Positions 3,839 through 55,352 are shown, counted from the first letter of the stretch. The stretch: 64,000 nucleotides of DNA from Mytilus californianus (GCF_021869535.1 NW_026262593.1:23498001-23562000); one strand, 5' to 3'. The notes: generated by a model not told the origin, from the letters alone. Numbers and translations: made by a program.

Positions 3839-4030
3839 CCGTATAGCGGGTTATTTTCGCGGGGTGTAAATTTTCGCGGATAGAACAAAATCGCCAAAAT
3901 AAATTCCGCCAATTTAAAAGTGCACATGCAATGGTATTGATAAAAGATTTGAATCCGCCAAAATATTTTGTATACCTTATTCAATGAAAATCGCGAAATT
4001 TTACACCCGCGAAAATAACCCGCTATACGG
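3839..4030. mobile_element. 192-bp Tc1/mariner-type MITE with TA target duplication
   Basis: About 39-bp TIRs ccgtatagcgggttattttcgcg.../...cgcgaaaataacccgctatacgg, flanked by TA on both sides; empty site (aggtggta-tatatt) at about 59300. Confidence 0.9.
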
Positions 4031-5602
4031 TATGTAATTATAAATAGTGAGACTAGATATAACACTGAATAAGTAAACATCAAATAATAAAAATACACTA
4101 CAAATTGTATCAACAGGTCAAATTAACACGAAAGTACGATTTGAGAGTACTTGCAGTTACTGAAAGCTAGTTAAAAGCCAAAAACAATTAATAATAAAAA
4201 AAGCATGCACCAGAGACTAAAATCAACTAAAACACATCCCAGGGATTTAGTGTTTTAACGCCATGGACTGTCAAAGAAGACATGACTTGCGCAATGCCAA
4301 AATAAAAGTATCGACAGGCAGTAGGATAGTTTGGAGTTAACCTGTTTATAAATATGTATAATGTAATATATAGATAGAGTAATCTCTATATAGAAAATGA
4401 ACGTGGATGTGTATTTATACATCCCAAAAAACCGTTTGAAAAGAATACAAATTTAGTTATGTTTTAATTTGCTGATGACAAAATCGATATTTGCGCCAAT
4501 GTAAACTATATTCAAAGATCTAATTACAACATTGGTAAGATAATTCTATGTCATTTGGTCTCTGGTGGAGAGTTGTCTCATTGGCAATTACACCACATCT
4601 CCTTATTTTTATATACAACAGTGATTTCGTGTATCCCGTCAGATAGTAAAGGCTGAGGCTTTGCTTGATGAATGTGTAACTTTAATAGTTTTGTTACAAA
4701 GATGATTTTGAGAACGCTTGTAAAATATTGAAGGGAAATTGTTTACTTGTATATTAGGCTATACAATAATCCTCGCTTGCTCATTTTGGAGCCATAATCA
4801 TTTCCACATGTATACAATTAGACAATTAACTGAAACAACAATGTTTTCTTTTTTAAACATTTCAAGAAAAATCAATAGTTTGTCAGTTCTAGAGTTGTGT
4901 GTTACTGCCTTTTACTATTAGCAAGAGGTACAATAGTATATAGAAAATAACAGTGCCGAGCATTGTCTGCGTTTCGTGCCGAATCCTTATATCGTGTATA
5001 TGTCAAGTCAATACACTATTGTTGTCTTTATACTGCAATCTTAAAGAATGTTATACCCATTGTGTGTTCTCATTTTGCTTTTAAAAATATGTTTAAAACT
5101 GCTGTCATAAGGATCACCCTAGAAATGTTTTGGCGGAGTAAAATTGTTATGTTTCAAAATGTGAAAGCATGCAGTTCATGCTGTCGGTTGAACGAGTGCG
5201 GCAGATGTCAGAATAGAACAATTAGAAATGAATATCAGAAATTATACTTATTAACCTTATCAAATAAAAAGATCAATTAAGAACAAAAGATTTTGTATAA
5301 TTTGTATGGGATAAATGAGTAGTAATGAGTTTATGTCGGTGACAGCCTCGCGTAAGTGTATTCATTTCATTACGAATTTAAAATTGATATGCGTGGTTAT
5401 CACATGAAAATATAGTTTACATTGGCACTAATATCGATTTTGTCATCAGCAAATTAAAACATAACTAAATTTGTATTTTTTTCAAGTGGGATGTATAAAG
5501 ACACACCCACGTTCGTTTAGATCTATAAAGAGGTTAAACTCCTAACTATCCTACTGTCTGTCGATACATTTATTTTGGCATTGCACTAGTCGTGTCTTCT
5601 TT

Positions 5603-5877: not shown

Positions 5878-6310
5878 TCAAAATTATTTATTTTGTAATA
5901 ATATTTCCTTTCTCTATTGGTACTGTACACATATACCTGACAACAAAATTATTTTCATTTACCTGTGTTTAAAGTTATTGCAAATGGATGGTATTTTTGT
6001 TCCGAGCATATTGTTTTTCTGTAATTGTTTAACATTTCTTACCGATATAACATGTTACTTTTATTATTCTTCCCTTAGTTTATGTATTTTGTATTCAAAA
6101 TTATTTATTTTGTAAAAATATTTCCTTTCTCTATTGGTACTGTACAGGTATACCTAACAACAAAATTATTTTCATTTACCTGTGTTTAAAGTTATTGCAA
6201 ATGGATGGTATTTTTGTTCGAGCATATTGTTTTTCTTTAATTGTTTAACATTTCTTACCGATATAACATGTTACTTTTATTATTCTTCCCTTAGTTTATT
6301 TATTTTGTAT
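5878..6310. repeat. Tandem duplication, 2 x about 218 bp
   Basis: Units start at 5878 and 6096 (caaaattatttattttgt...) and are nearly identical. Confidence 0.9.
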
Positions 6311-6445
6311 TTACATTGTGTCATAGGTCAAATTTATTTGTTCAGTGTATGTTCAATGTTGTTAATATGTCCTTTGATTGAATTAAGCTATTTCAGTTGA
6401 TATTTTATAGTGTGTCTTTCTATGTTGTGATGTTACACTATTGTT

Positions 6446-6529
6446 TCAGAAAAAGGGTGAAGGTTTGGTACCATTAAAACGTTTAAACCCGCTGCATTTG
6501 TTTGCACCTGTCCTAAGTCAGGAATCTGA
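6446..6529 (+). ncRNA. Type-P5 twister ribozyme (R1; apparently intact, predicted cleavage U6484^A6485)
   Basis: UCAGA..GGU-GA-AGG-[P1]-UAA-ACC-CGC-UGCA(6)UGCA-CCUG-UCCUAAGU-CAGG-A-aUCUGA; all core pairings satisfied. Confidence 0.85.
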
Positions 6530-7049
6530 TGTTCAGTAGTTGTCGTTTGTTGATGTGGTTCATAAGTGTTTCTCGTTTCTCGTTTTTTATATAGATTAGA
6601 CCGTTGGTTTTCCCGTTTGAATGGTTTTACACTAGTAATTTTTTGGGGCCCTTTATAGCTTACTGTTCGGTGTGAGCCAAGGCTCCGTGTTGAAGACCGT
6701 ACTGTGACCTATAATGGTTTATTTTTATAAATTTTTACTTGGATGGAGAGTTGTCTCATTGGCACTCATACCACATCTTCTTATATCTATCAACACATTT
6801 TGACTACGCAAATAGAACGATTGCAGTATAAATTTAAATATATATCTGGAGTACATAATCAATTTAAAAGATTGACTGAATCTCGCTTTTCTAGTTATAA
6901 AGACGACACACTTGGGTACCTGAACGCCGCAATTCAGAGTATACGTAGCGAATAAACTATTCCATGAATTTATCCAACAATAGTTCATCTTATCAAAACA
7001 CTTCTTTTTACGTTATCTGTCTTGTTGCTCTCTATCCCCTGCTGTTAAT

Positions 7050-16549: not shown

Positions 16550-17165
16550 TGGATGTTGGATGTGTATTGATTGATAATTTAGTCTTAGATGCATGATTTT
16601 TTATATTAGTTGTTATTGGCTTTGCACTAGCTGTCAGTAACTGCGAGTACTCTCAGATCTGTACTTAGTGTCTTTTTGTTGTAGGGATGTACAAGTACCC
16701 GGTCACGTCCACGTGTTTTTGTTATATGTATTTCTATTTGTATCCATCTGATGAGTTAAGCCTTTTTCAACTGGTTTTTATAGTTCGTTCTTATGTTGTA
16801 CTGTTACACCACTGTACCAGGTTAGCGGGAGGGTTGGAATCCCGCTAACATGTTTAACCCAGCCACATTCTGTATGTATGTGCCTGTCCCAAGTCAGGAG
16901 CCTGTAATTCAGTGGTTGTCGTTTGTTGCTGTGTTACATATTTGTTTTTCGTTCATTTTTTTGTACATTGATTAGGCTGTTAGTTTTCTCGTTTGAATTG
17001 AATTTACATTTGTGATTTCGGCGCCTTTTATAGCTGACTATGCGGTATGGGCTTTGCTCATTGTTGAAGGCCGCACGGTGACTAATAACTGTTAATTTCT
17101 GTGTCATTTGGTCTCTTGTGGAGAGTTGTCGCATTGGCAATCATACCACATCTTCTTTTTTATAT
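16550..17165 (+). mobile_element. PLE 3' UTR repeat, subfamily R1b (intron 4, antisense to host gene)
   Basis: Shares ctagctgtcagtaactgcgagtactctca with R1; contains twister; ends cataccacatcttctttttatatata. Confidence 0.8.
16818..16904 (+). ncRNA. Type-P5 twister-like motif (R1b; near intact)
   Basis: CAGGU..CGG-GA-GGG-[P1]-UAA-CCC-AGC-CACAU..AUGUG-CCUG-UCCCAAGU-CAGG-A-GCCUG. Confidence 0.75.
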
Positions 17166-17191
17166 ATACTGACATACTAAAGTATACATAC

Positions 17192-19019: not shown

Positions 19020-19880
19020 ATTTGCACTGGGTCGATACCACTGCCGATGAACTGTTAGACGCCAGGGGTATCATCACTTCAGTAGTCAGTGCCACGATTT
19101 ATAAAACGCTTTTCATAAATTCGCTATTGATGGATTAAGAAATTATCAAGAAACTAAGGTTACTACTCCACTTGTCCTACTCCCTCATGCAAAGTTGACC
19201 TAAGATGCATTTGTCTATTTTGAGGTGCCTTTTGGTCATATAGATGTTTGTCTATTTAGAGGTGCCTTTTGGTCATATAGCTGTTTGTCTATTTAGAGGT
19301 GCCTTTTGGTCATAAAGCTCTTTGTCTATTTGGAAGTGCCTTTTGGTCATATAGCTCTTTGTCTATTTAGAGGTGCCTTTTGGTCATATAGCTGTTTGTC
19401 TATTTAGAGGTGCCTTTTGGTCATATAGCTGTTTGTCTATTTGGAGGTGCCTTTTGGTCATAAAGCTCTTTGTCTATTTGGAAGTGCCTTTTGGTCATAT
19501 AGCTCTTTGTCTATTTAGAGGTGCCTTTTGGTCATATAGCTCTTTGTCTATTTAGAGGTGCCTTTTAGTCATATAACTCTTTGTCTATTTAGAGGGGCCT
19601 TTTGGTCATATAGCTCTTTGTCTATTTAGAGGTGCCTTTTGGTCATATAGCTTTTTGTCTATTTAGAGGTGCCTTTAGGTCATACAGCTCTTTGTCTATA
19701 TATTTAAAGGTGCCTTTTGGTCATATAGCTCTTTGTCTATTTAGAGGTACCTTTTGGTCATATAGCTGTTTGCTTGGTCAGTCATATATACATGCTTGCA
19801 TGGCTTTCAGGTGTTTTGGTTTGGGCGTTACTGATGAAGGTAAATCCTCAAAAGCGCTCGCACGAAATTAAAAATTTGTA
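19020..19880 (+). mobile_element. Retrozyme-like element containing an amplified 35-bp satellite
   Basis: 5' module ctgggtcgatacc... (as at 54085), internal array, 3' hammerhead-like ctgatgaaggtaaatcc at 19831. Confidence 0.55.
19205..19770. repeat. 35-bp minisatellite, about 16 copies
   Basis: Unit ttgtctatttagaggtgccttttggtcatatagct(c/g)t. Confidence 0.95.
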
Positions 19881-21260: not shown

Positions 21261-22830
21261 CGCATACAATTTACATGTATTGACTACTAAGTATATAATA
21301 AAGCTATTTACAATTATGCAGCAACACGGGGCTATATTAAACAACGAAACCAACAATTAACAGCAAAAGGCAAAGATTCCTTAACAAAACCCTAACCCAA
21401 AAATGAAACAATGCAGCTCTATAATGTACCAAGTCATCCACCCACAATTCACACAAATAAGATTTCCAGGAAACAATGTGCTTTTTTAGTATGTTCAATA
21501 TTAAGCTGATTTTGGAAAATAGATTTCAATTTAGGTATATTTGTAGGACTCGGAAGTGCAATGGGGACGCTGAAGTGCGATGGTCACGCTGATGTGCGAA
21601 GTCTGCCGTTTTTGTCTTATAACATGGACGCACAGTGTTGTGTTTGGGATGGTGATCCGAGTTGGGACCATGATAGAGCGACTTTACAAGGATAGATATA
21701 GTGTCCCGACAAAGAATTTCCGCCAGTTGCAGTAAAAAATAAAATACGACGATCTTATTCTGTTCTCTCATTTACAGTAGTCGAATATACTTGTTGCTAC
21801 TTTGTGTTGTTGTGACCAAGCAAGTAGTACTTGAATTTCTAATATATTCCTCGTTTTTCAGTATTTAAAATTAGTACTGGTTTGAATGGACTATAACCTT
21901 TGCATTTGAATTTTAATAACGCTTGTATGAACGTTTTATTATTTTTGTCGAAGCCTATTTATAAAGTAAACAATAACGTTCCAGTTATGATACGAAATGT
22001 AATGGCTAATTATCATGATATTCACGGTCTTTTACTTGAAAACCTGAAATTCTGCTTCTACCAATTATATCGACTTTTACATCGACATGATAACATGCAA
22101 AATATTGAAAATATAGTTATGTAATTCATCGCACTTCAACGTTGCCACCAACTCACTTCGTCGTACCTATCAACAACAAAGCGTCACAATGCTAATCATC
22201 GCACTTCAGCGTGATCAAAAACACACATCAGCGTCCAACAATCGCACTTCAGTGTGACCATTGCGGTCCAGAGTCCAACATATTTATCACCGTATTATAA
22301 TTAGATGATCTAACATCGCCATAATTAATTTGTATTTTTGTCGTCATACTGAAAAAAATGGCGATCAACTGTATTTACACCAAGAAATGAAATTGGATAC
22401 TCCGCATTTATCATGCTTTTTAATAACATATGATCAAATCGCTGAAAGAACCCCATCCTAACTTACTATCATTCTGCATTGACAATAATATCTTGGTGTA
22501 AATTAGATACACATATTCGGGCTGACGTCCACAAGGTATATCTAATACTTACAGATGTTCTTATCTCTCTTTGGATAATTTCATTCTGTCAGTCATTCAC
22601 AAACAATTGTAATTCGTTTAATCTTATCGCGGGAACCCGTGTAAACTTTTAAGGACAATAACACTCACTGACTTATAATGAGATCAAAATATAAAAATAA
22701 GAATATTTGGTATGAGAGCATATCACATAGAAGTTAAAAACTATGCGGCACTATACGGCCTTCAATAATGAGCAAAACCCATACCGTAGCATTTAATGTT
22801 ATTTTTCTATAAGGTATAATATATACTTAC

Positions 22831-24131
22831 AGAATTAACTGGTGTAAGCAACAGTCCAACAGGAAATCCGTACGACTCTAATTTTGCCTTGCCAAACAGT
22901 ATTCCGCCAATGACCGCTGTGTCATTAATATGATTCACAGTATGTGTACCGACAGATATCCTGACATACCCAGCGACTAGGTTACTTCCGGGTATCTGAT
23001 GGTATGTTGTGTTGCTAGGTAACGGATGATTATCTAGTCTGAGGCCATTTTTCTGATTACCATTTACAATAAACATGAAATAATTTGTATAGTTTCCTAA
23101 TGAATATTCAGGAGTAGTAAATGTATAATGGGCAGCATATTGTTCAATTGGTGGAATAGTGATCAATGAAGGATCGGCATGATCAAGGCTACCCTTCTTC
23201 TGCGTCAGAGAAAACTGATACAAGGAAATAGGTTTGTCCGAGACAACATGAGAGTACAAGCCTGAGCTATAATGTTTTTGAACAGATTGTCCGGCTTTAA
23301 CAATAGTAAATTTTTCGTTGAATGGAACGCCTTGGTCCATGCCAGTTACAGTAATTACAGTATTGTCTTCACTTGCCACAAACTTAAATATATCGCCTAC
23401 GTTAAATCTCTCAGGAATAGGAACTGTGGCAAAATTTTTCCCCCATGAATCTACCGGAAGTAACATTTCAACAAGATGGTCACGTGATGCACCAGTATTA
23501 CCTACTACTGCTTTTTTGTTACCACTTAAAACTCCCACTGGCTTATCGGATATAATATGACTTCCGGTTAAATCTGCCACGGAACTGATCTCCAAGGTAC
23601 TATATATATTTATAGTAAGATTTATCCATTGATTTTGATGATAGGTGATTCCTTTTAAAGTAACATTCAGACCAGGCGTATTCGGTAATTGTATAGCAAC
23701 ATTTGTATGATGAGCGGTCCCGATGACTGTAAAAAGGGTATAGTAGTAAGAAGGAGAATATGAAATGGTGTAATATTCTTTGCCTAACGCATCAACAGGT
23801 AAGGCAAGATAACCATCAGCGGAATGTAGTTCTCGGTTAACACCATACACAACGATTTCATGGTCTGATTGGATCACTATTGCTTTCTTTACTAATTGAG
23901 TATGGTTCAATCGATAACTCGTATTCAGTTGAGTTAGGTGAACCTGGCCCTGCGTCACGGTAAATGATTCATAGAGTCGTAAAGAGTGGTGAGCTACTTT
24001 TGTAGAAATATTGACATGAACAAGTTGTTTACTATCCGTTGTTATAAACAATTCTGGCGGTATATCTTGGTTTGTTATTTTGTTATCCATAAAAGCTACC
24101 AAAAATTTCGTTCCTCTGTTATCTAAGGCAC
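22831..24131 (-). CDS. IgGFc-binding-like gene, exon 2 (IgGFc-binding protein N-terminal domain)
   Basis: ttgcaacag|GT GCC TTA GAT AAC AGA GGA (ALDNRGTKFLVAFMDN)...SYGFPVGLLLTPVNS|gtaagt; FCGBP motifs DGYLALPVDALGKEY, DKPVGVLSG, DHLVEMLLPVDSWGKNF. Confidence 0.93.
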
Positions 24132-26334
24132 CTGTTGCAATTGAAACAATGAAATAAAATCAAGCATACAACATACTTTTGTAAAATTTGTGCAAGAATG
24201 TCAGGGAACATGAAATACCCTCAAATGTTGTGTATAAAAGAAAAGAAAGAATATGGGTTTTCCATCCATGACACAAAATCCGTACATACACAGCAAAAAT
24301 TCCAAAAAAGCAAAGCACATCCTATATTGTTGTTCTTCAACTCAAACTCACAGTTTTACCACCGACAAACACTATGTACATGTAATGTGTTTTAACATGG
24401 TCAAAGTGGCAAGTGTCATGAGTGGAGTAGGAACTGATAACCCAGTCTGAAGCAAATGTGTTTATCCCTATTTTAGCGAGATTTGATCTGTTCATTCATT
24501 AGGTTTCTGTGTTGTGTTTTGCAGATTGCTGTACATTGTTTACATTAAAAAACAAATTCTCAAAAAACAAAAGTCCTCTTAACATTTCATATACAACCGT
24601 AATTTGTTTTGTTATCTATGTTGATATAAAATAAAATTGTCAGGACTTTATTTCACTGTTTGACCAATGTTATTTTTGATAAATCGTATTCAAATGTTAA
24701 ATACAGAGTTTCATATTCAATATTCCTCCCAAAGCAATCTGGGAATTGCAAAAACTAGACTATTTCGTTTGTTATAAAAAGAAAATATCACACAATTTGC
24801 GTATATGCCGAAATAAATTTAAATACTTTACTTTTGTGTTTTTGTTTTAGTAAAAGTTAATGCTGAGTTCACATTAAAACTTCCAGGAAAATATGCGCAT
24901 CGAGGAAAATTGATTATTCAATTTTATAAAGGGACAACCATTTGAATTTCTGGGTGGAGGGGCAGGAGGATTTTGACAATGGAATAGCTTGGCCTGGTGA
25001 GAACTGAAAATAATATCTTTGCACAATACAGGATGAAAATGAATAATCTGCTTCATGAAATGCGGGATACTTGAGGATATAAATGTGAACAAAAGTGAAA
25101 TTAAATTTTCGCACGGCAAATATAATTTTAATAATCCTGTTCTTGGAATACATTTATATAACAGTAACGAGGACACCAGATAAGACGATAAGTGTATTAA
25201 TAATTAGCTCGTTCTTTATGTTACTTTTATGAATAACCCCGATGTCCGCTACGAGTAATAGCTTTTCTAAAAAAACTCGTCGTCTTCTGCCTATTTTAGT
25301 TATACAATTGTTGGTTAAGTAAACACTGTAAAGTATAACCTTTAGTCAAGTAAAGAATTTTTCACAAACTGTTTAAAGAATCCTTGCATATTGTAGTACT
25401 TGACACATTCTAGAGGTTATTGATGTGTAAACTGCGACAGATTAACTCACACAACCTGAATAAAAGTCCGACATGGCAACTTAGTACATACAATGTAAGG
25501 AAACGATCAAAACATAATTCATTTCTTGTTTTAGTTTTATGTTTACAAGATGGCTGCATGCATTATATTGGAGAGTAATTTTTCTAGGCATTCAACGATC
25601 TCCTTTTTTTTTGTTCTCGTCCTTAGTATGTATTTAACGTTTAGACATTAAGAAATCAACAAGGAATTATGATAACATACATACAAGTGTATTGCCGTTC
25701 CAAGACCATTTTCACAGATGTTTTTGGTCAGAATATGATTTATTTTAGTGGAAAGTAACCCTCATGAATAAGAGTTTTAAGTTAACATGGTTAATTACTT
25801 ATGAATAATAATTATTCTTCAGTATCAATCACCGTGTTTATTGGTTTTGGTTTGTGAACATTATTACAGAAAGCAAGTTTTCAGGAGTACGTTCAATTAT
25901 TTAATCATAATTATATTAAAAAAACAGTACATTTATACATAATTTGTGTCACCATTTTTGACTGCTCCATCGAGCAAGTAGCCGGCAATTAGTTCATAGT
26001 TGACATTGCGTGTAATAGACATGGCAATCAAGCACTGACTATGAAGCAAAAGATGAAAACAGACTCAACATGCAGATATCTTATACGTTCGGGTATTTCA
26101 CATCCAATCTTTTATGGTAATATTCTTTACAAAGCACAAAAATGTCAGTATTCACCTCAAAAGCTAACAAAACCTTTAAACAGACTTATTAAGAAGGGAT
26201 ATAGTTACGATACTGTCATTAAAGATTGCATATTTGGCTTTAATATTAATTCACTTATAGGGTCTTTGCATCGGAATTAAACACATTTATTCTAAAACCA
26301 GTTGTTGGCATGACACGGGTTATGTTCTTCTCAT

Positions 26335-26395
26335 ATATTTTATGACGGTATAATACTAAACCCCTAACAGGAGGGATTGTGCCTAATATTCATAA
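26335..26395 (+). promoter_or_regulatory. SECIS-like element (3' GA mutated to AA)
   Basis: AUGAC-GGUAUAAU...AAA-CCCCU..GAGGG-AUUGUGCC-UAAU. Confidence 0.55.
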
Positions 26396-26593
26396 GATGA
26401 AGACATAATCTTTTAATCAGTTTAATTGAGGTTTGGAGCTGGCATGTCAGTAACTGCTAGTAGTCCGTTGTTATTTATGTATTATTGTCTTTTTTGTTTA
26501 TTTTCTTTTGTTTCTTATTCTGACATCGGACTCGAACTTCTCTTATACTGAGTTTTACTGTACGTACTGTTGTGCGTTTGTTTTTTCTACATT

Positions 26594-26684
26594 GGCTAGA
26601 GGTATAGGGGGAGGGTTGAGATCTAAAAAACATGTTTAACCCCGCCGCATTTTTGCGCCTGTCCCAAGTCAGGAGCCTCTGGCC
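26594..26684 (+). ncRNA. Type-P5 twister ribozyme (R2; intact core, predicted cleavage U26637^A26638)
   Basis: P5 GGCUAGAGGU:GCCUCUGGCC; P2 GGG:CCC; GA; T1 GGG:CCC; UAA; CGC; P3 CGCA:UGCG; P4 CCUG:CAGG, loop UCCCAAGU. Confidence 0.88.
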
Positions 26685-28399
26685 TTTGTTAGTCTTGTAT
26701 CATTTTTTAATTTTAGTTTCCTGTGTATAATTTGGAGTTTAGTATGACGTCCATTATCATTGAACTAGTATACATATTTGTTTAGGGGCCAGCTGAAGGA
26801 CGCCTTCGGGTGCGGGAGTTTCTCGCTGCATTGAAGACCCATTGGTGGCCTTCTGCTGTTGTCTGCTCTATGGTCGGGTTGTTGTCTCTTTGACACATTC
26901 CCCATTTCCATTCTCAATTTTATTTGTTTCATATTTTGTTTTTGTTTACACGATATATGATATTGAATGAAGAGTTCTACCACATAGGTTATTGATGAGA
27001 TTTTTTTCTATAGCAAACATAAGTACGGTATGGGGTTTTCTCATTGTTGAAGGTCGTACTGTGGCCTACAATTGCTTACTACCACTTCATTTGGTCTCTG
27101 GTGGATATTTGTGTCATTGGAAATCAAACCACATTTCCTCCTATTTATATTAGTACATACAGCTCTTTTTCAAAACATGTCTTTATAGCTTGTACATGTA
27201 ATCAAACAAACGAATTTTTCAGAAATGTTTGTATTAAGTTTTTAGCATCAGTGGAATAAAATCAGTGATTCTTTTAAAAAATTTAAAAAACGAAGACAAA
27301 TAAGAAAATATTAATTAAACTGATGAATATTTACAATATAGAAAGAAAGAAGGAAAGAAAGAAAGAAAAGTGCTTTCTGTGGTTTTTTTTTCGTATTTTA
27401 AAACCAAAAGAATTATTGTGAATATTATTACGTTTGATTTTTTGGATTTTTTTTTAATGGAGACTTCTTGTGTTGCAATGACATGAAATATATCAAGGTT
27501 TTCTGCGCCAGTTTAGTAACTTTTAGGAATTAATTCTTTTTTCACTTTTCAAACAAAAGTGATAGAAACTATGAAAAAGATAGCAATGAGTGCAAAGATG
27601 GTGCCTTTCTTGTGTTGTATAAAGTATATCTTATATATTAGATTTGCAATTCATTCTTTCATTTTGTTGTATTTTACTACGATGCCGGTAAATTAGCCAT
27701 CTAAGGATTTGTATTAATGATTCGCGGTGCTGTTGTCAATGAATTTCGTAAATAATTGTACCGTGTGCTTGATTGATATCTCAATTCTAAGAAAATCGAA
27801 TTATTTTAAGAAAAAAACAACTGAAAAGAGGCTTTGACGAATCTTACTCCGTTTAGAAAAAGAAGTATACACGCATGTTTACTGAATGCCGATTCTTGAA
27901 CAGCCAGCTATCCCTTTTTTTCGGTATATCACTTTAAATGGGAAATTTAGTACATAACAACCATCGTATGAAATTGAATTATTTTTTCTTTATATTATTG
28001 AAATAATGTAACGTATACGTACAGAATACATATTTTGCCAGTTATTGACCTAAGCTGTCTGGGACGCCATTTTATGACGTTACATTTTAAACGGAAGTAT
28101 TTCGAGGGTGGGTGTACCGGATTGAAGGATTTCATGTCACCAGCATTATTTGAATGCAGTATTACCCGAAATCATAATAACTAATCTCGCAACTTTTATT
28201 AAATTTTGCAACAACCCCAAAAATAACAAATTTCTGAAGTAACAGTATTTCATAAGTTTGGGCATGATACCGCCTTGGTATAAAATTAGGGGGAATCGAG
28301 CTAAATTCATAACATATTTACACTAAATCCATTGGATTTGTACTGATTAATATGTATTCTTGTCTAAAAGAGCATGGTTATTTTATTAATTGATTCTTG

Positions 28400-28932: not shown

Positions 28933-30809
28933 TTTGACAATGCTACTCCTAAAACCCACTCTGACAATGACTTCCTATCAATTCCTTAGCCTATTTAAAT
29001 GTAAGCCATTCAGTTTAAAGTAAGTTCAAGACATACATTGTTGTGTATAATAAATACGGTAAGAGTTCGTTCTGGCACTCGCACCCTAGGAAATAAACAC
29101 ACATGTCATACAAATATTGTCAAACATGCAGTAAAACGGTTATGTAATGAATCATTCCCTAAATATAGAATTAGGAGAAAGGCGTGCAAAAGAAAGATCT
29201 AAATATAAGAAATAAAAATAATGGAATAAATGTATAAATTATCAAATATCAAAAAGAACTCGTTATCGGTTGTCCTTTTAAAATAAAGTTCACGTCTCCT
29301 TGATGTATACCCAACATTCCCTTTGTTATGACTGTACACTAAGTACTTGCCATGGCAATGTCAGTTGGTTTTCGACTTATGGGTTTGAATATCCTTTTGG
29401 TATCTTTTGCCTCTCTTTTACTTCCTGCTACAACAAAGGGGTTCTTTATGTTTCTTTAACATCGTTTAATCATATCACTCAATTTTTTTATTATTTTTGG
29501 TTTTGCCGTGACAATTTTAAAGGATTGCTTTAATGCTAGTTGGTGCACAAATGGTTTAAATAGATGTGCTTTTCAGCAACAAAGTAAAACATTCTGAATC
29601 TGTCTATTCTGAGTCTTATCAATTTAAGTGCACTTAATAAGAAGGTATAAACGCCCACGGACTAACAATTCAAGGTAATGGTGACACCACTGTTTTCTGA
29701 TAAAAATGTTAAGTAAGTACATGCAACTCTGTAATACTTTTGATTTTGGTAAGACTACGAGATTCTTATCAATGACGAAACATTGCTTGACATAAGACTT
29801 AATGTAGTCATTTTATGTAATCATTATATAATTTGGCCGCCTCTGTGGTCACATGATAGCGTGTATTGATCTTCTGTATAGTCAAACCAACGACACGACG
29901 CGAACAAAGACGTTACCAATTAACGAATCAGTATATTATATATTTCATGCACTATATTCGTTATTTTATGACCTCAGTTCAAAATCCAAAATTATGATTT
30001 GGTTGTCAATTATGCGATGAAGTGAATAAAAGAATTTTAAAGAAGAAGGAGGCCATAATCGAGTTCTATATAAAAATAAGGAGATGTGGACAAATTTCCA
30101 AAAGTACCAAAGACAAAATAGGTGACCAATTACATTTCACGGTATGTCCATCAATATTTTTAATGAGCTAAACCCTTACCGAATAAGCGGTAAACGGTCT
30201 GTATAACAAAACATGAAATAATTCTAAAGAAAAAACCAACAATCTATTATGAAAATAAGGAGGTGTGATTTAATTGTTTACGGGACAGCTATAAATATAT
30301 ATATATATATATAAGGATACAAATGGCGTAGATGTAAGCAACTATAGGTCACCGTACGGCCTTCAATAATTAGCAAAACCTTACCGTATAGTCAGCTATA
30401 AAAGGCCCAGACATTTGTCAAGCTGTTTAAAATATATTAAGTTTTCGAATTGTTATTTCAAATTCATTTTTATAAGGAAAATTACAGAAAAAGACAAAGA
30501 CAAACATCGACACCCGAATCATAAAAAAAGACATACAGACAGAGGAAGACAAAAAAAATATAGCGAATAGCATGATCAACACTTACTTATGGCACACAAG
30601 GTGGTCGGGTTAAACGCACTATACCCTTTCCCGTTTGTAGATCTACACCAGATGACGTGAAGGTTAAAATCACAATAAAAAAACCTACATAATAGTCAAA
30701 TTACCAACATACTGAAAACTAACATAAACAGTAAATAAAAGGATTCACAGAACATGGAAAGTTGGTATTCTAAAACCAGTTGTTGGCATGATACGAGTTA
30801 TGTTCTTCT

Positions 30810-54330: not shown

Positions 54331-54939
54331 ATTAACGTAATGCTAAATAAATTATTTAACTGTAAAACAGATAAATGTATGTACCGATAAAGACAATAAT
54401 GTCCATAGTATAAATGGAAAATTCTTGATTATTTAAATCAAAAATATCATAAAAGTCGGCATTATGAACTGTTCTCACTATAATTTAATCCTGCTTGTGT
54501 CTTACTAAATTTTTCTATGTACATATTAATTTTTCTTGTATGTTTTCATTACATTTTACAAACATTATTCAGAAACCAATACAGATAATTCATCATTTTG
54601 GAATTAAAACACTTTTTGAAGAAATATTAGTAAAAATTATTAAAAGAAATTTGATAATAGGTAATTCATATATTCATAATTTCATATGCATTTAAAATAT
54701 TTAATCTCTTGAAAACGAGAGACATATTTAAGTTAATACAAAAAGCAAATAATAAACAAAGAAGCAGTCAAAACAAATCATTTAAAGAAATTACGACCAC
54801 CATTGTCAAAAGAACACATATAAAGTAATTAAATCAGTTGCTTCGGGATGGTCAGCAATTCCTGGTTCACTAGTGGTATCCGTGTTGTTAAAACGAATTT
54901 CCTATTCAATGATAAGTTGCATTAAGTAATGTAATATTC

Positions 54940-55352
54940 TGAGGTTTACTTGTTGTAATGTACAATTATATTATTTATTTATGTATTTCTCAGTGCTGAG
55001 TGTTCTTGCGTTTGTTTGTATTGTATTCCTGTCACGTAGTGTTGTTATCTTAGCGGTATTTTTTACATTGCCATATAAGCGGGAGGTTTGGCTAGCCATA
55101 AAACCAGGTTCAACCCACCTATTTTTTTCTTAAAATGTCCTGTACCAAGTCAGGAATGTGGCAGTTGTTATCAGACAGTCCGTTTCTATGTATGTTGGCG
55201 TTTGCTTTTCTTGTAGTTCAGTGTTTATGTTGTCCGTTGTTTTCCGCTTATAGTTAATGTGTTTCCCTCGGTTAAAGTTTGTTACCCGGATTTGCTTTTA
55301 CTTAATCGAATTATGACTATTGAGCAGCGGTATACTACTGTTGCCTTTATTT
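54940..55352 (+). mobile_element. R4 3' UTR copy
   Basis: Aligns with 680-1060. Confidence 0.8.
55069..55163 (+). ncRNA. Type-P5 twister ribozyme (R4; apparently intact)
   Basis: P5 UGCCAUAU:AUGUGGCA; GG-GA-GGU; CAA-CC-CAC; T1 GGU:ACC; T2 AC:GU; P4 CCUG:CAGG. Confidence 0.78.

What the first reader, a model, noticed from the sequence alone, without database searches (positions are those of the whole stretch)
26594..26684. Circularly permuted (type-P5) twister ribozyme in the 3' UTR of Penelope-like retroelements
Seen: the repeat folds as P5 GGCUAGAGGU:GCCUCUGGCC, P2 GGG:CCC, GA, GGG, [P1 region], UAA, CGC, P3 CGCA:UGCG, and P4 CCUG:CAGG with loop UCCCAAGU followed by A. Known: the O. sativa twister core reads UAA-CAC-UGC...CCGG-UCCCAAGC-CCGG-A...GUG-GA-GGG, so this has the same nucleotides opened at P5, with the catalytic G (GA) and the A 3' of the scissile bond retained. 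It lies about 310 nt downstream of a PLE RT stop codon. From memory, Naiad-clade PLEs (RT at the C-terminus) were reported to lack canonical hammerheads, and P5 twisters were known mainly from environmental sequences. Inference: a twister may process Naiad transcripts as hammerheads do in other PLEs. I am not aware of this being described but cannot check.
Basis: partly seen in the sequence, partly recalled or inferred. Interest (0 to 1): 0.95.

Follow-up and report, generated by a model that had tools for sequence, protein, structure and literature searches.

The report
Twister ribozyme motif in Naiad retroelement tail
The flagged 91 bases have the full architecture of a rearranged "twister" self-cutting RNA, built into the 3' tail of Naiad-type Penelope-like jumping genes, a group published as lacking the ribozyme its relatives carry; actual cutting has not been shown.

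Summary
Window 26594-26684 (+) folds as a type-P5 twister: P5, P2, GA, T1, UAA, T2, P3, and P4 with loop UCCCAAGU. It lies 314 nt after the stop codon of a 5'-truncated Penelope-like element (26063-26923).

The element is Naiad-type. Its RT is C-terminal, preceded by pieces carrying a GIY-YIG-like tail, a CxC motif and a DKA motif.

The motif occurs 16 times in the window, in at least four diverged tail families. It also lies after the ORF in 8 of 8 loci, from five other assemblies, whose RTs are 48-53% identical.

On 33 copies, 87.8% of cells pair, against 41% or less in slid controls. Twenty of 24 pairs show compensatory changes, including both pseudoknots, which were not in my search model.

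Caveats:
- Rfam Twister-P5 scores only 23.1 bits (threshold 37.6), and only for family A.
- There is no canonical P1 hairpin. Two covarying palindromes replace it and favour pairing between two RNAs.
- Four RNA-seq runs show no pile-up of ends at the predicted cut.
- Four more distant Naiad-like ORFs show no twister.

No paper in the searchable library links twister and Naiad. This scan has noted the same thing on at least eight other windows of this genome.

Verdict: a real, selected twister-class motif and a new variant in a new host element. Catalysis is untested.

The parts
26063..26923 (+). 5'-truncated copy of a Naiad-type Penelope-like element (family A): end of the RT ORF plus the whole 3' UTR
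   Evidence: 95.3% identical over 871 aligned columns to the longer copy L022:5197-8304. Family copies share this 3' end and differ in their 5' truncation point.
26063..26280 (+). C-terminal remnant of the RT ORF with its stop codon (26278-26280). The stop-free frame runs from 25993.
   Evidence: The frame matches the C-terminus of the 480-aa RT frame L022:6220-7659.
26281..26923 (+). 3' UTR of the element. It ends at a fixed terminus (...CTCAATTTTAT) next to AT-rich flanks.
   Evidence: RNA loose ends at the element's 3' boundary in L024 read AT-rich (table 7).
26594..26603 (+). P5, 5' strand (GGCUAGAGGU)
   Evidence: Pairs with 26675-26684. P5 covaries between families.
26607..26610 (+). P2, 3' strand (GGGG)
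   Evidence: Pairs with 26640-26643. The closing pair is seen as GC, UA, AU, UG and CG across copies.
26611..26612 (+). Conserved GA. The G is the candidate catalytic guanine, which I state from memory of twister structures.
   Evidence: Aligned to the conserved GAGGG of RF02684. Present in all intact copies.
26613..26615 (+). T1 pseudoknot, 5' strand (GGG)
   Evidence: Pairs with CCC 26663-26665. Other families have AGG:CCU, GGU:ACC and AGA:UCU.
26616..26637 (+). Stretch that takes the place of P1. It holds palindrome A (here a remnant, AGAUCU 26619-26624; the family majority has UUGAGAUCUCAA) and palindrome B (AAACAUGUUU 26628-26637, ending in U-1).
   Evidence: There is no stable monomer fold, the homodimer is -10 to -20 kcal/mol, and the palindromes covary between families.
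26637..26638 (+). Predicted scissile bond U26637^A26638
   Evidence: By alignment to the UAA of RF02684. Not confirmed by RNA ends.
26638..26645 (+). AA (26638-26639), P2 5' strand CCCC (26640-26643), T2 5' strand GC (26644-26645)
26646..26657 (+). P3 hairpin (CGCA, loop UUUU, UGCG)
   Evidence: All four pairs covary. RNAalifold and the single-sequence fold each predict three of the four pairs independently.
26658..26674 (+). P4 (CCUG:CAGG) with loop L4 UCCCAAGU (T1 partner CCC, T2 partner GU), followed by A26674
   Evidence: P4 changes to AUCG:CGAU and ACCG:CGGU in other assemblies.
26675..26684 (+). P5, 3' strand (GCCUCUGGCC)
6432..6544 (+). Family B twister copy (T1 AGG:CCU, P2 GGGU:ACCC); predicted cut U6484^A6485
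   Evidence: R1 117.6 bits
31062..31172 (+). Family A copy (P2 GAGG:CUCC)
   Evidence: 99.7 bits
37312..37436 (+). Older family A copy with an insertion in P5
   Evidence: 77.2 bits
15555..15668 (-). Fragmentary, decayed family A-like copy
   Evidence: 48.8 bits
3387..3497 (-). Family B copy
   Evidence: 108.5 bits
38609..38719 (-). Family B copy (P2 GGGA:UCCC)
   Evidence: 108.8 bits
58841..58953 (-). Family B copy with a mutated L4
   Evidence: 101.4 bits
60400..60510 (+). Family B copy
   Evidence: 107 bits
63262..63374 (+). Family B copy
   Evidence: 108.1 bits
14688..14800 (-). Family C copy
   Evidence: 96.6 bits
16803..16920 (+). Family C copy (P3 CACAU:AUGUG)
   Evidence: 109.4 bits
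28437..28548 (+). Decayed family C copy
   Evidence: 81.8 bits
762..879 (+). Family D copy (T1 GGU:ACC, T2 AC:GU, C at -1)
   Evidence: 70.8 bits
55057..55176 (+). Family D copy
   Evidence: 74.5 bits
55572..55692 (-). Family D-like copy
   Evidence: 73.3 bits

Best explanation
The 91 bases are a twister-class self-cleaving ribozyme motif in the circularly permuted type-P5 arrangement. It is a conserved, built-in part of the 3' UTR of Naiad-clade Penelope-like retroelements in this genome, which looks like a bivalve mollusc.

Shown here:
- It lies on the sense strand, about 210-820 nt after the RT stop and about 240-290 nt before the element's fixed 3' end. This holds in several families here and in related elements of other assemblies.

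Inferred:
- When folded, the RNA cuts itself between U26637 and A26638 by the usual twister transesterification, leaving a 2',3'-cyclic phosphate and a 5'-OH.
- The canonical P1 hairpin is replaced by two self-complementary stretches that barely fold within one molecule. The active or regulated form is therefore probably a pair of RNAs, or two copies in one tandem transcript. Hammerheads of other Penelope-like elements are described in the same way.
- The role is probably to process multimeric or read-through element transcripts into unit-length RNA, possibly ligatable into circles. The twister would thus fill the place that hammerheads hold in the other clades.
For: Sequence and fold:
-. All positions written in upper case in the RF02684 consensus line are matched, except one C-to-U in the T2 partner and positions inside P2 and P4, whose pairing is kept.

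Abundance:
- 16 copies in 64 kb against 0.01 expected.
- Roughly 650,000 first-look candidates genome-wide, a rough count.

Covariation:
- 15 window copies: 83% of cells paired, against 30-43% in slid controls.
- 33 copies from six assemblies in all (this genome and five others): 87.8% against 41% or less, and 20 of 24 pairs with changes on both sides.
- T1 is seen as GC/AU and GC/UA/AU. T2 is seen as GU/AU/CG/UG. Neither pseudoknot was in the search model.
- RNAalifold recovers P5, P3 and P4 on its own.

Selective conservation:
- Between tail families A and C, only the twister stretch can be aligned.

Host element:
- Fixed 3' end and variable 5' truncation.
- The RT frame has LPKLHK, FDFSTLY, IPMGT and YLDD. 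Upstream pieces carry ELHWIKKLQTVYPLGLN, CNC and PADKAAN.
- Atlas neighbours are HTH_animal/RVT_1/GIY-YIG clusters.
- Family B tails follow a related RT C-terminus.

Other assemblies:
- A motif lies 209-420 nt after the ORF in L055-L061, and weakly in L058 and L062.
- Selenocysteine insertion (SECIS) elements there match the selenoprotein Naiads of PMC8557442.

Palindromes:
-.

Literature:
- Naiads lack canonical hammerheads (PMC8557442).
- Hammerheads of Penelope-like elements act as dimers through a palindromic stem III loop (PMC6765202).
Against: - Rfam. There is no hit at gathering score in the window. Family A reaches only 23.1 bits against 37.6, with P1 skipped. A family B copy and a copy from another assembly get no twister hit even at E <= 10.
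- No canonical P1.
- RNA-seq from four runs shows no begin/end pile-up at the predicted cut, at the tool's threshold of a fifth of the depth. Reads span the site at flank-like depth (751 at 4059 against 853 at 3982 in X21). Coverage tracks copy number on both strands.
- Integrated copies extend about 240-290 nt past the cut site. The RNA that was reverse-transcribed was therefore uncut at that twister.
- 5' truncation points do not pile up at the cut (the sample is small and partly biased).
- No twister was found after four more distant Naiad-like ORFs.
- Palindrome B can extend over U-1 and the AA, and the monomer fold pairs T1 and the following UU with AACCC. Either structure could hide the cleavage site.
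Confidence: 0.7

Rival explanations
1. A twister-derived structured RNA that no longer cuts. The fold is kept because the element's RT, or RNA dimerisation and packaging, uses it as a 3' UTR recognition or pairing signal. P1 was lost and the palindromes serve only dimerisation.
For: - No canonical P1, and a sub-threshold or absent Rfam score.
- RNA-seq reads cross the site with no pile-up of ends.
- Integrated copies contain uncut twisters.
- Alternative pairings can bury U^AA.
Against: - The nucleotides that matter for catalysis rather than for folding (GA, U/C-AA, the L4 core) stay constant across families and assemblies, while the helices drift.
- P1 is reported to be dispensable for inefficient cleavage (PMC8501958).
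- Hammerheads of other Penelope-like elements also cleave poorly as monomers (PMC6765202).
Confidence: 0.2
2. The twister is a selfish passenger that hitch-hikes in Naiad tails and does nothing for the element. PMC8557442 raises this possibility for hammerheads.
For: - Four more distant Naiad-like ORFs seem to lack it.
- PMC8557442 notes that hammerheads may simply parasitise Penelope-like elements.
Against: - The motif is retained at the same relative place in at least four diverged families here and in five other assemblies, while the rest of the UTR diverged beyond alignment.
- A passenger without benefit should be lost often.
Confidence: 0.06
3. The motif belongs to a separate short non-autonomous repeat (SINE- or Helitron-like) that merely lies near remnants of Penelope-like elements.
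For: - Some copies start at a shared TATTCT about 8-11 nt after the stop, with no ORF upstream.
- The copy number is very high.
Against: - In 19 of 20 family A loci the homology runs without a break from the tail into the ORF, with scattered 5' ends. L015 holds an insertion within the tail.
- TATTCT is simply a conserved start of the UTR in families A and B.
- ORF matches sit 11 nt upstream of tail matches at many genome places.
Confidence: 0.02
4. Chance resemblance to a twister in a common repeat.
For: The Rfam score is below threshold.
Against: Compensatory changes occur in six helices, including two pseudoknots, and shuffles and slid controls fall far below the observed values.
Confidence: 0.01

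Closest known systems
Type-P5 twister ribozyme (Rfam RF02684, clan CL00120)
   Same: Same order of elements: P2 3' strand, GA, T1, closed P1 region, UAA, P2 5' strand, T2, P3, then P4 with the YCCAAG loop, and the molecule opens at P5. Both pseudoknots and the conserved core letters are present.
   Different: There is no P1 hairpin; two palindromes take its place. The T2 partner is GU instead of GC. T1 varies (AGG:CCU, GGU:ACC, AGA:UCU). The score is 23.1 bits against a 37.6 threshold for family A, and other families get no hit. The host is a eukaryotic retroelement UTR.
Hammerhead ribozymes in the pseudo-LTRs of canonical Penelope-like elements (Cervera & de la Pena 2014; Lunse et al. 2017, as reviewed in PMC6765202)
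   Same: A small self-cleaving ribozyme motif lies near the 3' end or terminal repeat of a Penelope-like element. The closed helix is reduced to a palindrome, which implies action as a dimer. The biological role is equally unclear.
   Different: It is a different ribozyme class (twister, not hammerhead). There are two palindromes rather than one. The host clade, Naiad, was reported to lack canonical hammerheads.
Twister variants at the 5' end of Perere-3 (RTE) non-LTR retrotransposons of Schistosoma mansoni (PMC8501958)
   Same: A twister is associated with a retrotransposon. P1 is weak or absent, and the segment GAGGG-UUGG after P2 is similar. [quoted passage not shown]
   Different: Those are type P1, sit at the 5' end and define the 5' terminus of the element's RNA, and half of P1 comes from the target site. 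Here the motif is type P5, lies inside the 3' UTR, and both halves are copied with the element.
HDV-like ribozymes of R2 and L1Tc elements
   Same: A self-cleaving ribozyme processes a retroelement transcript (PMC6765202).
   Different: The fold is different, and it sits at the 5' end rather than in the 3' UTR.

Membership tests
Twister ribozyme class | Helices P2 and P4 (with optional P3 and P5) supported by base pairing across homologues | tested here: met
   P2 is 80.8% paired, P3 89.4%, P4 92.7% and P5 86-90%, with compensatory changes in each. Slid controls reach 41% or less.
Twister ribozyme class | Two pseudoknots: T1 (after GA, with L4) and T2 (L2 with L4) | tested here: met
   T1 pairs are GC18/AU11, GC27 and GC14/UA7/AU2. 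T2 pairs are GU19/AU4/CG2/UG1 and CG29. Neither pseudoknot was part of the search model.
Twister ribozyme class | Conserved core nucleotides (GA before T1, U-A-A at the cleavage site, L4 YCCAAG, L2 GC) | tested here: met
   Alignment to RF02684 and columns of A4. Exceptions: the T2 partner is U instead of C, family D has C at -1, and the A after P4 is not kept in other assemblies.
Twister ribozyme class | P1 helix closing the cleavage-site loop | tested here: not met
   Infernal skipped P1 with a local end. The monomer fold of the stretch is 0 to -3.9 kcal/mol. Two palindromes stand in its place. P1 is reported to be non-essential for inefficient cleavage (PMC8501958).
Twister ribozyme class | Rfam curated gathering score for Twister-P5, P1 or P3 | tested here: not met
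   No hits at gathering score. Family A reaches 23.1 of 37.6 bits. A family B copy and L061 have no twister hit at E <= 10.
Twister ribozyme class | Site-specific self-cleavage giving a 2',3'-cyclic phosphate and a 5'-OH | tested here: inconclusive
   RNA-seq of four runs shows no pile-up of ends at the predicted site, and reads span it. Most coverage is passive and on both strands.
Naiad clade of Penelope-like elements (PMC8557442) | RT at the C-terminus of the ORF with the GIY-YIG endonuclease N-terminal to it | tested here: met
   The RT frame ends the ORF. An upstream piece with ...ELHWIKKLQTVYPLGLN is nearest to GIY-YIG clusters, with a score of 0.90, which is a lead only. Full-length homologues carry the RT at residues 500-970 of 915-996, one of them with a weak Pfam GIY-YIG hit. 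Pfam itself is blank on the local pieces.
Naiad clade of Penelope-like elements (PMC8557442) | CxC linker motif, and DKA in place of DKG | tested here: met
   SCNCSNS and VPADKAANN in L022 and L024. SCSC and APADKAANN in P0108, and VPADKAANN in P0011. The criterion is taken from the paper's text.
Naiad clade of Penelope-like elements (PMC8557442) | No canonical hammerhead; insertion bias for (TA)n | tested here: met
   No hammerhead in the window at the Rfam gathering score. Flanks at 3' ends are AT/TA-rich (table 7). I made no phylogenetic placement.

The most novel reading that the evidence does not exclude
A large, very successful branch of Naiad Penelope-like elements, with perhaps 10^5 copies in this genome, depends on a dimer-activated twister ribozyme in place of the hammerhead used by other clades. 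Endonuclease-bearing Penelope-like elements in general would then need some self-cleaving RNA, whichever class. Cutting of tandem or paired transcripts, followed by host ligation, would yield unit-length, possibly circular, templates. Bivalve genomes would then hold by far the largest natural reservoir of twisters, in an architecture without P1.
Probability: 0.35. Interest if true: 0.85.

Novelty: new variant of a known kind. Interest (0 to 1): 0.75.

Why it matters
Hammerheads are a hallmark of Penelope-like elements. Their apparent absence from Naiads and Chlamys was used to argue that the ribozyme is dispensable, or a mere parasite of the element (PMC8557442).

A conserved twister at the equivalent place in Naiads points the other way. 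Two unrelated ribozyme classes would have been recruited for the same job, so self-cleavage itself would be the needed function.

The finding also offers:
- A natural twister that lacks P1 and seems built for pairing between two RNAs, which makes dimer-dependent ribozyme control testable.
- A second documented link between twisters and retrotransposons, after Perere-3.
- An explanation for a very abundant repeat motif in this genome.
- A warning that Rfam models miss most of these copies.

Tried and rejected
- Rfam at gathering score over the whole window: nothing.
- Rfam in E-value mode on a family B copy and on L061: no twister hit.
- SINE/Helitron-like idea. It was prompted by the shared TATTCT start and the defined 3' ends. 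I dropped it after family copies showed scattered 5' truncation running into the ORF.
- P1 as an intramolecular helix between the nucleotides after T1 and those before U-1. This pairing is not conserved; only family D allows UUUGG:CCAGG.
- Domain-swapped P1 between palindromes A and B. The two are not complementary to each other in most families.
- RNA evidence. One read-laying run on L024:3600-9500 with four raw RNA runs showed no end pile-up and no consistent back-joint at the site. This is no support, and not a refutation.
- Genomic footprint of cleavage, meaning copies that start exactly at A+1. None was seen among the copies in hand.
- Supplementary Naiad consensus library of PMC8557442: not held.
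- Roth et al. 2014: not held.
- Pfam on the local RT and EN pieces: no RVT_1 or GIY-YIG hit.
- Distant Naiad-like ORFs from marine metagenomes (L063-L067). No twister turned up with R1 (filters off), with Rfam, or with a descriptor of my own.

Full report
**Observation**

Exact coordinates:

| Element | Coordinates |
|---|---|
| P5 | 26594-26603 with 26675-26684 |
| P2 | 26607-26610 with 26640-26643 |
| GA | 26611-26612 |
| T1 | 26613-26615 with 26663-26665 |
| U^AA | predicted cut between 26637 and 26638 |
| T2 | 26644-26645 with 26668-26669 |
| P3 | 26646-26649 with 26654-26657 |
| P4 (loop UCCCAAGU) | 26658-26661 with 26670-26673 |
| A | 26674 |

The P4/L4 16-mer occurs 16 times in the window against 0.01 expected. 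The isolated RNA folds to -37.1 kcal/mol, z = -3.3, with P5, P3 and P4 in the minimum-energy structure.

**Match to curated models**

At Rfam gathering scores the window has no hit at all. With permissive filters on 201 bases, Twister-P5 (RF02684) matches 26607-26673 end to end. The score is only 23.1 bits against a threshold of 37.6, with E = 0.005, and Infernal skipped P1 with a local end. A family B copy and a copy from another assembly get no twister hit even at E <= 10. By Rfam's own rule this is therefore not a member. The reasons are visible:
- There is no P1 hairpin.
- There is an inserted P3.
- The loop and the T1 letters change together, which a covariance model without pseudoknots reads as two mismatches.

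**Covariation**

The 16 window copies fall into at least four tail families:

| Family | T1 | P2 | P3 | T2 |
|---|---|---|---|---|
| A | GGG:CCC | GGGG:CCCC or GAGG:CUCC | CGCA:UGCG | - |
| B | AGG:CCU | GGGU:ACCC or GGGA:UCCC | UGCA:UGCA | - |
| C | - | - | CACAU:AUGUG | - |
| D | GGU:ACC | - | CAUUUU:AAAAUG | AC:GU |

(a dash means I did not list that element for the family.)

On a plain MAFFT alignment of 15 copies, 83% of cells pair, against 30-43% when the partners are slid. RNAalifold finds P5, P3 and P4 by itself.

I built a covariance model (R1) without the pseudoknots and collected 33 copies from this genome and five other assemblies. On these copies:
- 87.8% of cells pair, against 41% or less in slid controls.
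- 20 of 24 pairs show changes on both sides.
- No shuffle reaches the covariation score.
- The T1 pairs are GC18/AU11 and GC14/UA7/AU2, and one T2 pair is GU19/AU4/CG2/UG1.

The pseudoknots were not in the model, so the alignment was not fitted to them. I take the twister fold as established, as far as computation can establish it.

**The host element**

The genome has 1.65 Gb. The 636-base tail has more than 4,000 first-look candidates, the best about 97% identical. The 95-aa frame just upstream has more than 21,000. At many places the two lie 11 nt apart.

Family A copies share one 3' end (window 26923) and start at scattered points inside the ORF. This is the footprint of target-primed reverse transcription. 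The window copy spans 26063-26923 and is 95.3% identical to a 3.1-kb copy.

That longer copy has a 480-codon stop-free RT frame with LPKLHK, FDFSTLY, IPMGT and YLDD. Upstream of it are pieces carrying ...ELHWIKKLQTVYPLGLN, SCNCSNS and VPADKAANN. Craig et al. (PMC8557442) give exactly these traits as diagnostic of Naiads: an N-terminal GIY-YIG, a CxC linker, DKA instead of DKG and a C-terminal RT. They also state that Naiads lack canonical hammerheads, and the word twister does not occur in the paper.

Pfam is blank on the local pieces. The ESM Atlas places the RT among HTH_animal/RVT_1/GIY-YIG clusters (0.97) and the upstream piece next to GIY-YIG clusters (0.90, a lead only).

Family B twisters lie about 750-820 nt after a related RT C-terminus. 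I considered that the tail might be a separate short repeat. The continuous homology into the ORF rules that out.

**Other assemblies**

The RT has thousands of relatives. For eight proteins 48-53% identical I fetched the DNA. They come from five ENA assemblies whose organisms are unknown to me.
- Six loci have a clear R1 hit 209-420 nt after the ORF end.
- Two have weak or expanded versions (L058 with a poly-C run, L062).

These copies add fresh compensation: P4 AUCG:CGAU and ACCG:CGGU, T1 AGA:UCU, T2 CC:GG and P2 GUGG:CCAC. SECIS elements lie right after the stop in several of them (L055 5174-5241, 39 bits against a threshold of 35). This fits the selenoprotein Naiads of clams described in PMC8557442.

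In contrast, four more distant Naiad-like ORFs (34-44% identity, marine metagenome contigs, 650-930 nt of 3' flank) show no twister and no other Rfam ribozyme. I searched them with R1 (filters off), with Rfam, and with a descriptor of my own. The association is therefore shown for one large branch of Naiads, not for the whole clade.

**The missing P1**

Between T1 and U-1, every family has two self-complementary stretches.
- Palindrome A follows T1. Variants: UUGAGAUCUCAA, UGGUACCA, UUGGCGCCAA, UGAGCGCUCA, UGGCUAGCCA, AGGUACCU, AUGGCCAU, GGGAUCCC.
- Palindrome B ends at U-1. Variants: AAACAUGUUU, AAACGUUU, AAACCGGUUU, AAAUGCAUUU. It is interrupted in family D.

In 10 of 13 representatives, at most 14 of 5,000 shuffles do as well. 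As a single molecule the stretch folds to 0 to -3.9 kcal/mol. As a homodimer it folds to -10 to -20 kcal/mol.

The parallel with hammerheads of Penelope-like elements is close. Their stem III is cut down to a palindromic loop and they are thought to cleave as dimers (PMC6765202). Whether pairing switches cutting on or off is open. Palindrome B can extend over U-1 and the AA, and the monomer fold pairs T1 and UU with AACCC.

**Does it cut?**

I could lay four raw RNA-seq runs of one organism label on a locus holding a family A element and a family B tail.
- The element is transcribed. The ORF part is sense-biased in one run.
- The tails are covered on both strands at depths that follow genomic copy number. 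Most of that signal is therefore passive.
- No begin/end pile-up is listed at the predicted cut (L024 4052|4051), and reads cross it at flank-like depth. The tool lists only sites that reach a fifth of the depth.

Copies in the genome extend about 240-290 nt past the cut, so the templates that were copied were uncut at that twister. 5' ends do not pile up at A+1 in the small sample I hold.

None of this refutes a slow, dimer-dependent or regulated ribozyme, and hammerheads of Penelope-like elements behave in the same way. It gives no positive support either.

**Literature and earlier notes**

Twisters are known at the 5' end of Perere-3/RTE elements in Schistosoma, as type P1 with a weak P1. 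[quoted passage not shown] A search for twister plus Naiad returns no paper, and none of the 12 papers with twister ribozyme plus Penelope links the two.

This scan has already noted the same motif, the same host and the same palindromes on at least eight other windows of this genome. I reached the reading independently before that look-up. Those notes are not independent evidence.

**Verdict**

This is a real, selected twister-class motif of type P5, without P1 and with two palindromes in its place, built into the 3' UTR of a large branch of Naiad retroelements. It is a new variant of a known ribozyme class in a host reported to have none. Catalysis and biological role remain to be shown at the bench.

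Noticed in passing
L055:5174-5241 and 6019-6086; weaker in L056:4472-4542 and L057:4367-4429: SECIS elements (39 and 34.5 bits against a threshold of 35) lie directly after the stop codon of Naiad ORFs in other assemblies, upstream of the twister. In L055 the SECIS-plus-twister unit is duplicated in tandem with a period of about 845 nt, and palindrome A differs between the two copies.
   Followed up: partly
window 26289-26294, 30766-30771, 640-645, 54935-54940; L043 (reverse strand) about 10 nt after the stop: A TATTCT motif lies 8-11 nt after the stop codon in tail families A and B, and at the start of homology in family D. It may be a conserved start of the UTR; its meaning is unknown.
   Followed up: partly
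window 19210-19772: A tandem array with a 37-bp unit, 15 copies, 92% matches.
   Followed up: no
window 22810-24159 (-): A 450-codon stop-free frame, probably a host exon or gene. I did not characterise it.
   Followed up: no
L053/L054 (G000:C107:1854467-1862314): Two family B twisters lie 528 nt apart in a tandem duplication of part of the tail. The whole 3.1-kb locus is repeated 4.7 kb away at 99.8% identity. ORF matches on contig C92 are spaced about 5 kb apart, which suggests tandem Naiad arrays.
   Followed up: partly
L021:4395-4517(-) and L058:4629-4761: Homopolymer expansions inside twisters: a long G run across P2/GA/T1, and a poly-C run in the P2 5' strand. Both should inactivate those copies.
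   Followed up: no
window 6540-6790, 16920-17170 and relatives: Tails of families B and C share a roughly 250-nt 3' module (GGGGCC ... GTTGAAGRCC ... GGAGAGTTGTCTCATTGGCA ...) at about 70% identity. From memory it resembles widespread bivalve repeats; I did not check this.
   Followed up: no
L060:2555-2679(-): An inverted twister-bearing tail fragment lies directly upstream of a Naiad ORF. This fits the inverted 5'-truncated copies described for Penelope-like elements in PMC8557442.
   Followed up: no
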